Source: Sminthopsis crassicaudata (lineage: Eukaryota). Taken from it: a DNA stretch of 64,000 nucleotides. The stretch is from the NCBI RefSeq assembly GCF_048593235.1, contig NC_133621.1, positions 301,515,146-301,579,145 of the forward strand, in the 5' to 3' direction. Positions 46,344 through 58,054 of the stretch are shown piece after piece; position 1 is the stretch's first letter, and each line of letters begins with the position of its first letter. Below the pieces are notes generated by a model. That model made no database searches. It had not been told where the DNA came from and saw only the letters and a list, made by a program, of their open reading frames with translations. A program made the translations under genes and the position numbers.

Positions 46344-46765
46344 GTGAGAAATGGGCTCTCCCTCGGGGGTCTCTTCTGGCCCTGGGCTCCCGTGGGCCTG
46401 TCTGAGGATGGGTCTCCGGTGGTTGGCCACTTGTGAGGATAGCTGAGATTGGGATGATTGGTGGTGTTACTGCCGCTATTCCTGCATCTTATTGAATTAG
46501 TAATAACTTTCCCTCACTGTACTGCACCGTACTAAATCAGAAACTTGCTGTGGGCTATTTTATATATATATAAATTTGTGTGTATGTGTGTTTAAATTTA
46601 TTTATTTATTTTTAAGTATTTATTTCCTTAAAAGTAGAACATCAACAGACAGGTGAAGAGAAGTTAAAGTTATGAGCTTGGAGGGTAGAAGGTCCTTAAA
46701 AGCAGTTGATTTGTTCTTTTGGCTTGTCATTCAAACCTTTGCAATGTGTCCCATTTACCTTGCAG

Positions 46766-46854
46766 TTGGAGTTTTCACCCCAAACACTTTGTTGCTATGG
46801 CAAACAGTTGTGCACAATCCCTCGAGATGCCACTTACTACAGTTACCAAAACAG
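46766..46854 (+). CDS. EP300: EP300 exon 19 (RING)
   Basis: cag|TTGGAGTTT ... AAACAG|gtaagc; 89 nt; LEFSPQTLCCYGKQLCTIPRDATYYSYQN. Confidence 0.97.
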
Positions 46855-46925
46855 GTAAGCCTGCCCCCAGAGAGGCCTTCCAGACATCTAGGAAAGGGTG
46901 GGTTCAGGTCTCTTAGGAAAGAATT

Positions 46926-47030: not shown

Positions 47031-48122
47031 CCTCCCCCCCCCCCAAAAGAAAAAAAAAAGGCGAGTGTTCTCTGAGACAATTTATGTTACTAGCTCTTCT
47101 CTGTTCACAGAGAAGTTTATTGCAGTGAGATCCATGAGAAGTTCTTGGTATCCAGATAGATTAAATATGTATTTCAGCGTGTTTATTTTTTGTATATAGA
47201 GAAGAGCCCCTTGCCCTAACCAGCCATCAGCAAATGTTTCTTATCCGTAGTAATTGTATGTCTGCCTTTTCAGGAACCAGCATATAGTATAACTATGCTC
47301 ACTGTATTCTCTTTCATGCTGGCATGCCGTGATATGTGATGGCAAAACTGGAAAAACAAATAAATTTAAATGAAAGAACATTTTTTTTGTAGTGATGGCC
47401 CTTTACCAAGGTTCTGATTTTGAAAAATGATTGCTTTAGCAAAGTTTGACGCACTCTCATTAACATTTTGGTGGTAGTTGAGGCTCCGTTGATTACGTTT
47501 AGTGAAATTTTTAAAGCTAGAATAACTGAATGATAGTTGGCATGGAGCATTCCCCGTTGTCCTGCTCTTCCCCACCCTTGCCCTCCAATATGTTGTCTTG
47601 ACACCATTTTGGCTTCTAAATTCCAGCCCATTCGGAAGTTGTGTGTGTGAGTCTGCATGCAGGCGCACAACTCTCCGGGGGCTTGGCCTCCACCCTATTT
47701 CAGTAAGGACCCCCCAATAGTCAGCCCCCAACTTGGCCAAGGTCAGACTTTGTTCCCCATGATGACCTCGGGATTGTCACAAGAGGGATAGAGGAAAGTA
47801 GGATTGCCCTACTTAAGGGAAGGACACAGGAGCATTTCTCCCCTTCCCCTTCCTCAACCGGATCCTTTGCTTCAAGTGGCATGGGGGGTGTGGGTTGACT
47901 TCATTGGAATTGATTTGCTGCTTGGGGAATCCCATTTGAGAGATTGAATGCTAATCTGTGCTTTGCCTTGGCTTTCTGCTCTGTGTTGTCTTGTCTGGCC
48001 CCGTGTTGTCCGTTGTCCCGCGATCCCACGTTTGTTTTGAGTACGTGTGTACGTGTGTGTTGTTTTTTTTTTTTCTCCCATGCTTGTCGTTGTCTGCACT
48101 TGGCTCTGATTGCAAACACCAA

Positions 48123-48146
48123 CCCAAACCCAAACCCAAACCCAAA
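48123..48146. repeat. (CCCAAA)4 hexamer array
   Basis: CCC runs at 48123, 48129, 48135 and 48141, each followed by AAA. Confidence 0.95.
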
Positions 48147-48286
48147 CTGTGGGTGCCCATGTACCTCCATCATTGACTGTCCTTGTCGCCGTTGATGACC
48201 TGCTCTCTGCTCCTGTCCCCCTCCTTGGCCTGCTGTGATTGGTGGCATCGTTGCGTGGCTTGGGCTGTGTTGGGTGACCGGAACAG

Positions 48287-48316
48287 TTCACCCCAGTATG
48301 GCCTTCTTGCCGACAG
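48287..48316 (+). CDS. EP300: Putative alternative 30-nt 5' extension of exon 20 (adds SSPQYGLLAD to the RING domain)
   Basis: Upstream acceptor aacag| at 48285-48286 lies exactly 30 nt before the canonical AG. In phase 2 it reads S-S-P-Q-Y-G-L-L-A-D-R with no stop. It is the first AG after a ~240-nt AG-free zone. Confidence 0.7.
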
Positions 48317-48397
48317 GTATCATTTCTGTGAGAAGTGTTTCAATGAAATCCAGGGCGAGAGCGTATCTCTGGGGGATGATCCATCCCAGCCTCAAAC
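48317..48397 (+). CDS. EP300: EP300 exon 20 (RING)
   Basis: cag|GTATCATTTC ... CAAAC|gtaagt; 81 nt; YHFCEKCFNEIQGESVSLGDDPSQPQT. Confidence 0.96.
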
Positions 48398-48950
48398 GTA
48401 AGTATCTGTGGCTTAGGATCGGTGCCTGTGAATGTTTCACTTGGAAAAGCGTTGTCATCTCACCTCGTTCATTTGAAAACAGTCATCCCTTTTAGTCCTG
48501 TCTGTCAGTATCATAAATACGTGTTGAGACCAGTGTGTGAGTTGTACACGTCACTTTATCTTGGAAACAAGTGTGGTCTGACCTCTCTCGGAGACTCCAA
48601 CTAGAGAGCAGAAAAGTAATTTCTCTGAGCCATGGACTCAAATAGAAAGGAAAGAGGAGGATGACCTCTAAGGAGGGGCCACTGCTAACATCTTCAGAGG
48701 TTTGATCCAAATCACGACTGAAACTAAAGTTTCCAACAAGATTGAACTCAATTTATTACTCCACGAATTGTATTCAGAATAGAGCGCTGCCGGGTCCAAG
48801 TGAACATCACTATAATGCTTTGAGACCAATGAATATTGTTGAGGGGAACAAAGTCTAAGGCAAAATCTATCATGAACCTTATAGTAATGATTGGGATAAG
48901 TGCTGTACATTTGAAGTGATTCTTCTACTCCCAAAATTCCCATGAGGAGA

Positions 48951-57866: not shown

Positions 57867-58054
57867 GTAAGCTTGTGGTGCCAGGAGCCTCTGGGAAGCC
57901 CCCAGACCTGATGTGGGTTGGGGTGGAGAGGGGCAGGGCTCCCGGGACCGCCCGTATTTCTATACACCTTGGTGCCCCATGAGGGCGAGGCTTTGGGGGG
58001 GAGGATGCTGGGAGTCAGACTTCCCCAGTGACCGGGCCTCTCTCCCTTCTCCAG

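What the first reader, a model, noticed from the sequence alone, without database searches (positions are those of the whole stretch)
48287..48316. Hidden in-frame 10-aa insert (SSPQYGLLAD) in the RING domain that gates the HAT site
An alternative acceptor at 48285-48286 converts YSYQN-RYHFCEKC into YSYQN-SSPQYGLLAD-RYHFCEKC, between the N1196 and R1197 equivalents. The frame is preserved and the sequence also serves as the pyrimidine tract of the canonical acceptor. The p300 RING is established to restrict HAT access, and the insert carries an S-P motif and a Tyr. I recall similar SSPKYGLLADR inserts in predicted non-mammalian p300/CBP isoforms and a comparable insert in Drosophila CBP, which would make it ancient; this is unverified. 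A splice-controlled, phosphorylatable switch on acetyltransferase activity is the best candidate for an under-described system in this window.
Basis: partly seen in the sequence, partly recalled or inferred. Interest (0 to 1): 0.75.

Follow-up and report, generated by a model that had tools for sequence, protein, structure and literature searches.

The report
Conserved optional 10-residue p300 RING segment
A second, older splice acceptor 30 bases upstream of the usual one can add ten amino acids to the RING domain of this marsupial's p300 gene; the same option is kept in p300 and CBP from sharks to mammals and is annotated in databases, but I found no paper that has studied it.

Summary
An AG at 48285-48286 lies 30 nt upstream of the usual acceptor (48315-48316) of the EP300 exon that begins RYHFCEKC. 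Using it adds in-frame SSPQYGLLAD after ...YSYQN.

It is not a chance open frame:
- Nine genomic copies (marsupial, other tetrapods, teleosts) keep the AG at the same base, with no indel or stop.
- Variation falls mostly on third codon positions.
- Conservation stops abruptly upstream of the AG.
- An AG-free, pyrimidine-rich zone of 152-527 nt precedes the AG in 8 of 9 copies.
- Paralogues that lost the 30 nt splice to RYHFCEKC from an ordinary tract, so the segment is not needed for the usual acceptor.
- In insects and other invertebrates a homologous segment (SSLKAYGLASD and similar) is part of the annotated protein. The upstream site is therefore the ancestral acceptor, and the vertebrate "canonical" site is derived.

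Sixty-four vertebrate p300 and CBP entries in public databases carry the insert, including tamandua, horse, polar bear, a bat (CBP), a turtle, a snake, frogs and sharks. Its existence is therefore already annotated. No paper in the searched library mentions it, and no solved structure contains it.

The phospho-switch idea remains untested, and the Tyr is not conserved.

The parts
46766..46854 (+). EP300 exon encoding LEFSPQTLCCYGKQLCTIPRDATYYSYQN plus AG (first half of the RING hairpin); donor GT at 46855-46856
   Evidence: ORF 46706-46858 reads ...LEFSPQTLCCYGKQLCTIPRDATYYSYQN.
48042..48284 (+). AG-free, pyrimidine-rich, A-poor zone of 243 nt (A 14%, C+T 62%) ending at the upstream acceptor. 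This is the signature of a distant branch point.
   Evidence: the nearest upstream AG is at 48040, and 0 of 5000 shuffles reach this run length. Equivalent runs of 152-527 nt occur in 8 of 9 insert-bearing loci, against 18 and 44 nt in paralogues without the segment.
48233..48242 (+). Intronic motif ctgtgattgg (A at 48238, 47 nt before the upstream AG). CTGATTGG is kept in the other tetrapod-type loci. Candidate distal branch point or regulator site (inference).
   Evidence: alignment of window, L008, L007, L009, L011 and L010.
48285..48286 (+). Upstream (ancestral) acceptor AG
   Evidence: AG at the identical position in all 9 genomic copies. Invertebrate exons start at this position.
48287..48316 (+). 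Optional 30-nt segment encoding SSPQYGLLAD
   Evidence: The identical peptide appears in annotated tamandua, horse and polar bear p300.
48287..48291 (+). TTCAC, a match to the branch-point consensus yUnAy (A at 48290, 26 nt before the usual AG). Candidate proximal branch point for the short form (inference).
   Evidence: Invariant apart from the first base in one locus.
48295..48296 (+). Third AG, created by the mammalian Gln codon CAG. Using it would add 20 nt and shift the frame.
   Evidence: Absent where the codon is AAA.
48315..48316 (+). Usual (derived, vertebrate) acceptor AG, formed by the codons GAC AG|G
   Evidence: All 16 distinct p300/CBP sequences with solved structures correspond to this junction.
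48317..48397 (+). Constitutive exon RYHFCEKCFNEIQGESVSLGDDPSQPQ(T); donor GT at 48398-48399
   Evidence: (p300 chains, E 1.5e-14).

Best explanation
The window holds the 3' half of a marsupial EP300 gene. The exon that starts RYHFCEKC has two in-frame acceptors 30 nt apart.

The upstream AG (48285-86) is the ancestral metazoan acceptor. The 30 nt behind it encode an ancestral 10-residue piece of the RING domain with the pattern S-S-P-[KQ]-[YF]-G-L-[LIV]-A-D. In invertebrates a homologous piece is part of the annotated protein.

In jawed vertebrates the codons GAC AG|G inside that exon became the main acceptor, so the ten residues became optional. Both options have been kept under protein-coding selection in EP300 and in CREBBP.

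Shown: the anatomy, the conservation, the coding-type substitution pattern, the AG-free zone, and annotated long isoforms in many other species.

Inferred:
- This marsupial also makes the long form.
- The choice is made by branch-point use. A distant branch point upstream of the 243-nt AG-free pyrimidine tract would lead to the first AG. A proximal TTCAC inside the segment would lead to the usual AG.
- The pyrimidine tract is a site of regulation, for example by PTB-type proteins.
- At protein level the ten residues lengthen the beta-hairpin TYYSYQN/RYHFC next to the zinc ligands of the RING, the domain that restricts access to the acetyltransferase site.
For: Gene identity:
- p300 structures match at E 1.5e-14.
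- Bromodomain, HAT and ZZ/TAZ2 exons are present and the last exon ends STLDIH.
- The last exon is 93% identical to wallaby p300.

Genomic conservation:
- The AG is at the same base in 9 of 9 copies, with no indel or stop.
- Third codon positions vary at 6 of 10 sites, positions 1 and 2 at 3 of 20 (Fisher p=0.03). The constitutive exon shows 22 of 27 and 5 of 54.
- All 60 ungapped columns upstream of the AG vary.

Other lines:
- Paralogues without the segment use an ordinary tract (L012, L013).
- AG-free runs of 152-527 nt precede the upstream AG in 8 of 9 copies, and 0-14 of 5000 shuffles reach them.
- Invertebrates carry YFSYQN-SSLKAYGLASD-RYTFCQKC (Diabrotica), SLKAYGVVSD (Bombyx) and K-NPTPSLFSD-KYTFCEKC with a clean exon junction (L005).
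- 64 vertebrate cluster representatives carry the insert, for p300 and CBP. There is a clear score gap between entries with and without it.
- Dendrobates isoforms X1/X2 and X3/X4 differ by exactly these 10 residues, and horse p300 carries SSPQYGLLAD.
- Both AlphaFold runs place the insert as an extension of the hairpin, strands 143-151 and 156-164.
Against:
- The two annotated wallaby p300 isoforms both lack the insert.
- The upstream AG has a weak, G/T-rich immediate context.
- Mammals have an extra out-of-frame AG at 48295-96 that could divert some use.
- Part of the sequence conservation may serve the usual acceptor (branch point and tract).
- Database isoforms are predictions. A few odd junction models (P0258-P0260) show that such predictions can be wrong.
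- The structural models are of low confidence: pLDDT is below 50 at the tip, and TM is about 0.58 to solved p300.
Confidence: 0.8

Rival explanations
1. The 30 nt are conserved only as splicing signals (branch point plus pyrimidine tract) for the usual acceptor. On this view the open frame is a relic of the ancestral exon, and the long isoforms in databases are low-level splicing noise or prediction artefacts with no protein function.
For: TTCAC at 48287-91 matches the branch-point consensus at an ideal 26 nt from the usual AG, and the segment is moderately pyrimidine-rich. Wallaby annotation lacks the long form. Some fish models have spurious junction peptides.
Against: Paralogues that lost the segment splice to the same exon from a generic tract. 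Variation is concentrated on third codon positions and the replacements are conservative: K/Q, Y/F, L/I/V. There is no frameshift in 9 genomic copies, and 64 annotated proteins from two paralogues that separated early in vertebrate evolution carry the insert. The long AG-free zone implies selection tied to the first AG.
Confidence: 0.12
2. The insert is a splice-controlled phospho-switch. Phosphorylation of the S-P serine or the Tyr in the insert would move the RING and open or close the acetyltransferase site.
For: S-S-P is kept in essentially all vertebrate copies. The RING is described as a gatekeeper of the HAT site, and phosphorylation elsewhere in p300 is reported to disrupt the RING-HAT contact (PMC12547938).
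Against: The Tyr is Phe in many teleost and salmonid p300 genes. Insects have S-L-K instead of S-P. The positions best kept across animals are [YF]-G-[LIV]-x-x-D, which suggests a structural role. No phosphorylation data were available and the models are unreliable.
Confidence: 0.1
3. In this marsupial the upstream site is a dead relic. The sequence is still intact but is never used, and the long form is used only in other lineages.
For: No reads could be laid. Wallaby isoforms lack it. The mammalian CAG codon adds a competing out-of-frame AG.
Against: The peptide is identical to that of annotated placental long isoforms. The 243-nt AG-free zone and the AG are intact. A close relative (L008) also keeps the frame.
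Confidence: 0.08

Closest known systems
Annotated long isoforms of vertebrate p300 and CBP, for example XP_077025073.1 (Tamandua p300 X1), UniProt A0A3Q2H4N6 (horse), A0A452V8S3 (polar bear), XP_036266112.1 (Pipistrellus CBP X7), XP_073218873.1 (Lepidochelys CBP X1), A0A670Y0H9 (Pseudonaja) and many teleost entries
   Same: Same junction and the same or nearly the same ten residues. The placental p300 entries carry exactly SSPQYGLLAD.
   Different: They are predictions for other species. The annotated wallaby p300 isoforms lack the insert, and none of these isoforms has been characterised in any paper I could find.
Invertebrate CBP (nejire-type) RING domain
   Same: A homologous 9-11-residue piece sits between ...YQN and RY.FC.KC. 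The intron is at the same position, and [YF]-G-[LIV]-x-x-D is shared.
   Different: It is part of the annotated protein there, with no in-frame downstream AG in L005. The S-P is absent.
The p300/CBP RING as solved (4BHW, 5LKU, 6GYR, 5U7G and others)
   Same: Same domain and same flanking strands. The RING is described as a gatekeeper of the HAT site (PMC12547938).
   Different: All 16 distinct solved sequences are the short form. No structure shows the ten residues.
Regulated 3' splice sites with distant branch points and long AG exclusion zones (from my own knowledge, not checked here: Gooding et al. 2006; PTB-regulated exons of tropomyosin and actinin)
   Same: A long AG-free, pyrimidine-rich zone ending at the first AG, with CUCUCU-type motifs inside it.
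   Different: No branch point was mapped and no regulator tested. Here the competing site lies 30 nt downstream inside former exon sequence.

Membership tests
EP300 (KAT3B) gene, RING-encoding exon | Sequence match to the p300 catalytic core around the RING zinc ligands | tested here: met
   p300 chains match at E 1.5e-14 and CBP slightly lower. FNEIQGESVSLGDDPSQPQ is identical to p300.
EP300 (KAT3B) gene, RING-encoding exon | Gene context: bromodomain, HAT, ZZ/TAZ2 and Q-rich last exon in order on the same strand | tested here: met
   ORFs (46119.., 52701.., 54844.., 57606.., 58028-60241 ending STLDIH); 93% identity to wallaby p300.
Conserved alternative (tandem) 3' splice site with in-frame extension | A second AG at a distance that is a multiple of three, with an open frame | tested here: met
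Conserved alternative (tandem) 3' splice site with in-frame extension | AG position and frame kept across distant species and paralogues | tested here: met
   (9 of 9 genomic copies). (p300 and CBP).
Conserved alternative (tandem) 3' splice site with in-frame extension | Substitutions follow a coding pattern | tested here: met
   6 of 10 third positions vary against 3 of 20 others, p=0.03. The sample is small.
Conserved alternative (tandem) 3' splice site with in-frame extension | Transcripts that use the site | tested here: inconclusive
   Only indirect evidence: annotated isoforms in other species.
Distant-branch-point acceptor (AG exclusion zone class) | Unusually long AG-free zone ending at the acceptor | tested here: met
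   243 nt here and 152-527 nt in relatives, against 18-44 nt in paralogues without the segment.
Distant-branch-point acceptor (AG exclusion zone class) | Mapped branch point far upstream | not testable with these tools
   This needs lariat reads or primer extension.
Phospho-regulated switch segment | Conserved phospho-acceptor residues | tested here: inconclusive
   S-P is kept in vertebrates but not in insects. Tyr is replaced by Phe in many fish.
Phospho-regulated switch segment | Observed phosphorylation and an effect on HAT activity | not testable with these tools
   No data were available. The models are too poor.

The most novel reading that the evidence does not exclude
The long-RING form may be a regulated isoform of both p300 and CBP, tissue- or state-specific and chosen by branch-point selection under a pyrimidine-tract binding regulator. 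It would restore the ancestral, longer RING hairpin and so change how the RING gates the acetyltransferase site or which partners the RING binds. If so, the short form studied in all structural and biochemical work would be only one of two conserved enzyme states.
Probability: 0.25. Interest if true: 0.8.

Novelty: already known. Interest (0 to 1): 0.5.

Why it matters
p300 and CBP are among the most studied chromatin enzymes and are drug targets, and their RING domain is described as the gatekeeper of the catalytic site (PMC12547938). All 16 distinct solved sequences use the short RING. The data here show that a longer RING is the ancestral animal form. They also show that vertebrates have kept the ability to make it, in both paralogues, since before sharks and bony vertebrates split. 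The isoform sits in databases, but I found no paper that names it. If it is expressed in a regulated way, it offers a simple and directly testable handle on RING-dependent autoinhibition. If it is only rare background splicing, it remains a clear example of an ancestral acceptor preserved beside its replacement.

Tried and rejected
- **Reads.** No junction evidence was possible. One local script counted AG dinucleotides over 47885-48285 from the stored file.
- **Joined model.** I searched exon pieces by reference and used natural database proteins for folds.
- **P0009.** This is a read-through ORF with the same Q-type insert. Its DNA was marked 'withheld' and I did not pursue it.
- **AlphaFold, catalytic core with insert (A2).** Mean pLDDT 50.
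- **AlphaFold, bromodomain-RING-PHD module (A3).** pLDDT 65.7, and TM only about 0.58 to solved p300. I used it only for secondary structure, not for placing the insert relative to the HAT site.
- **Literature.** The peptide strings are in no paper. Searches on RING, isoform and splicing found nothing relevant. The one EP300 'alternative acceptor' hit (PMC3850988) concerns another junction. Delvecchio et al. 2013 is not held.
- **Earlier notes of the scan.** Only this same finding turned up.
- **Chance open frame.** Considered and rejected on the comparative data.

Full report
**What is in the sequence.** The window carries the 3' half of an EP300 orthologue on the + strand.
- The exon 46766-46854 encodes LEFSPQTLCCYGKQLCTIPRDATYYSYQN and ends with AG of a split codon. 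GT follows at 46855.
- The next exon is normally entered at 48317, after the AG at 48315-16. It reads (AG)G TAT CAT..., that is RYHFCEKCFNEIQGESVSLGDDPSQPQ(T), and its donor GT is at 48398.
- A second AG lies at 48285-86. The 30 nt behind it are open in the same frame and give SSPQYGLLAD.
- The exon matches solved p300 chains at E 1.5e-14.
- The window also holds the bromodomain, HAT and ZZ/TAZ2 exons and the last exon. The last exon is 93% identical to wallaby p300 and about 81% to placental, bird and reptile p300. The genome is therefore a marsupial's.

**Is it more than chance?** In one genome alone it would not be. I searched with the read-through ORF 48183-48398, which holds the insert without any joining of exons. 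That returned genomic read-through ORFs from other animals in which SSPKYGL[LIV]AD stands directly before RYHFCEKC. A full-library search with the 37 residues gave about 17 such ORFs. I fetched DNA for eight of them.
- In all nine copies, window included, the AG is at the same base. There is no indel or stop in the 30 nt.
- Similarity ends abruptly upstream of the AG.
- Third codon positions vary at 6 of 10 sites, and first and second positions at 3 of 20 (p=0.03). The constitutive exon shows 22 of 27 and 5 of 54. All 60 ungapped columns upstream of the AG vary.
- The replacements are conservative: Q/K, Y/F, L/I/V.
- Two paralogous loci that lack the segment (L012, L013) reach the same RYHFCEKC exon from an ordinary T-rich tract. 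The 30 nt are therefore not needed for the usual acceptor.

**A second, independent signal.** Upstream of the AG at 48285 there is no AG for 243 nt; the previous one is at 48040. None of 5000 shuffles reaches that length.
- The other insert-bearing loci have AG-free runs of 152-527 nt. L008 has one extra AG 3 nt upstream and then 178 nt without any.
- The two loci without the segment have runs of 18 and 44 nt.
- The zone is A-poor and pyrimidine-rich.
- From my own knowledge, such AG exclusion zones mark acceptors served by distant branch points. They imply selection that keeps this AG the first one met.
- A motif CTGATTGG inside the zone is shared by the tetrapod-type loci.
- TTCAC at the start of the segment fits the branch-point consensus, 26 nt before the usual AG.
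- I therefore infer a choice between a distal branch point, which leads to the upstream AG, and a proximal one, which leads to the usual AG. This is inference only.

**Where it comes from.** Full-length insect CBP proteins read YFSYQN-SSLKAYGLASD-RYTFCQKC (Diabrotica) or SLKAYGVVSD (Bombyx).
- Other invertebrate proteins carry SSPTKGFICD, SGQFGISCD or TKPQFGVAPD at the same place.
- In a compact CBP gene from a marine metagenome (L005) the junction is explicit...TAT GAA AAT AA|gt...tttag|A AAT CCG ... GAC AAG TAC. That gives K-NPTPSLFSD-KYTFCEKC, and there is no in-frame downstream AG.
- Many invertebrate genomic exons begin at this same point.
- The upstream site is therefore the ancestral acceptor. 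The vertebrate main site arose inside the exon at the codons GAC AG|G.

**Is it known?** A search with a natural long isoform (P0132, a narrow region around the insert) split the hits cleanly: at least 65 bits with the insert, at most 53 without.
- Sixty-four vertebrate cluster representatives carry it.
- p300 entries: many teleosts, a snake, frogs, tamandua and polar bear.
- CBP entries: skates and sharks, teleost crebbp-b, a turtle and a bat.
- Horse p300 also has SSPQYGLLAD.
- In Dendrobates, isoforms X1/X2 and X3/X4 differ by exactly these ten residues.
- Both annotated wallaby isoforms lack it.

The isoform's existence is thus already in public annotation. In the literature I could search, the peptide occurs in no paper. 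A 2025 review of p300/CBP regulation does not contain the stem 'splic' at all. Other searches found nothing relevant. All 16 distinct p300/CBP sequences with solved structures are the short form.

**What it might do.** The RING is described as a gatekeeper over the HAT substrate site (PMC12547938).
- Two AlphaFold runs on the natural tamandua long form both drew the insert as a lengthening of the hairpin TYYSYQN(S)/(L)ADRYHFC, with S-P-Q-Y-G at the tip.
- Confidence there is below 50. The models fit solved p300 only moderately, with TM about 0.58.
- I take the hairpin extension as plausible. The position relative to the HAT site is unknown.
- The residues best kept across animals are [YF]-G-[LIV]-x-x-D. 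The S-P is vertebrate-only and the Tyr is often Phe. A structural role therefore looks more likely than a phospho-Tyr switch, and S-P phosphorylation remains open.

**Limits.**
Use of the site in this species is therefore inferred, not shown.
- The fetched metagenome and Logan loci carry no organism names.

**Verdict.** The feature is a real, ancient alternative acceptor, already annotated but not studied in any paper I found. The proposed phospho-switch function is unproven.

Noticed in passing
window 48295-48296: The mammalian Gln codon (CAG, where other vertebrates have AAA) creates a third AG 10 nt after the upstream acceptor. Using it would add 20 nt and shift the frame. It lies only 5-6 nt after the candidate branch A at 48290.
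   Followed up: partly
L008:~770-810 (close relative of the window): This locus has gAGcAG at the upstream acceptor, a NAGNAG-type tandem 3 nt apart, and encodes K instead of Q in the insert. Its intron aligns with the window over more than 150 nt.
   Followed up: no
window 48120-48152: A (CCAAAC)n microsatellite lies in the intron about 140 nt upstream of the upstream acceptor, inside the AG-free zone.
   Followed up: no
window ~60700-60880: A run of N (gap or masked) lies downstream of the EP300 stop codon, in the 3' UTR region.
   Followed up: no
P0258, P0259, P0260 (Sinocyclocheilus and Amphiprion database models): These models carry unrelated short peptides (SSLCVY, SKLNIFSC, SNPHYSSLSINIM) at the same junction. 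They look like prediction artefacts in paralogues that have lost the conserved segment.
   Followed up: partly
P0230, P0267, P0268, P0269 (Dendrobates tinctorius p300 X1-X4): Besides the 10-residue RING event, the isoforms differ by a second 7-residue event elsewhere in the protein (lengths 2438/2431 and 2428/2421).
   Followed up: no
L005:299-5467 (TARA ocean metagenome scaffold): A very compact CBP/p300 gene of an unidentified marine eukaryote. TAZ1, KIX and bromodomain lie in one 852-residue ORF, and the RING segment K-NPTPSLFSD is constitutive.
   Followed up: partly
P0009: A read-through ORF with the same SSPQYGLLAD and an upstream intron translation very like the window's. Its DNA was marked withheld, so its source is unknown and I did not pursue it.
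   Followed up: no
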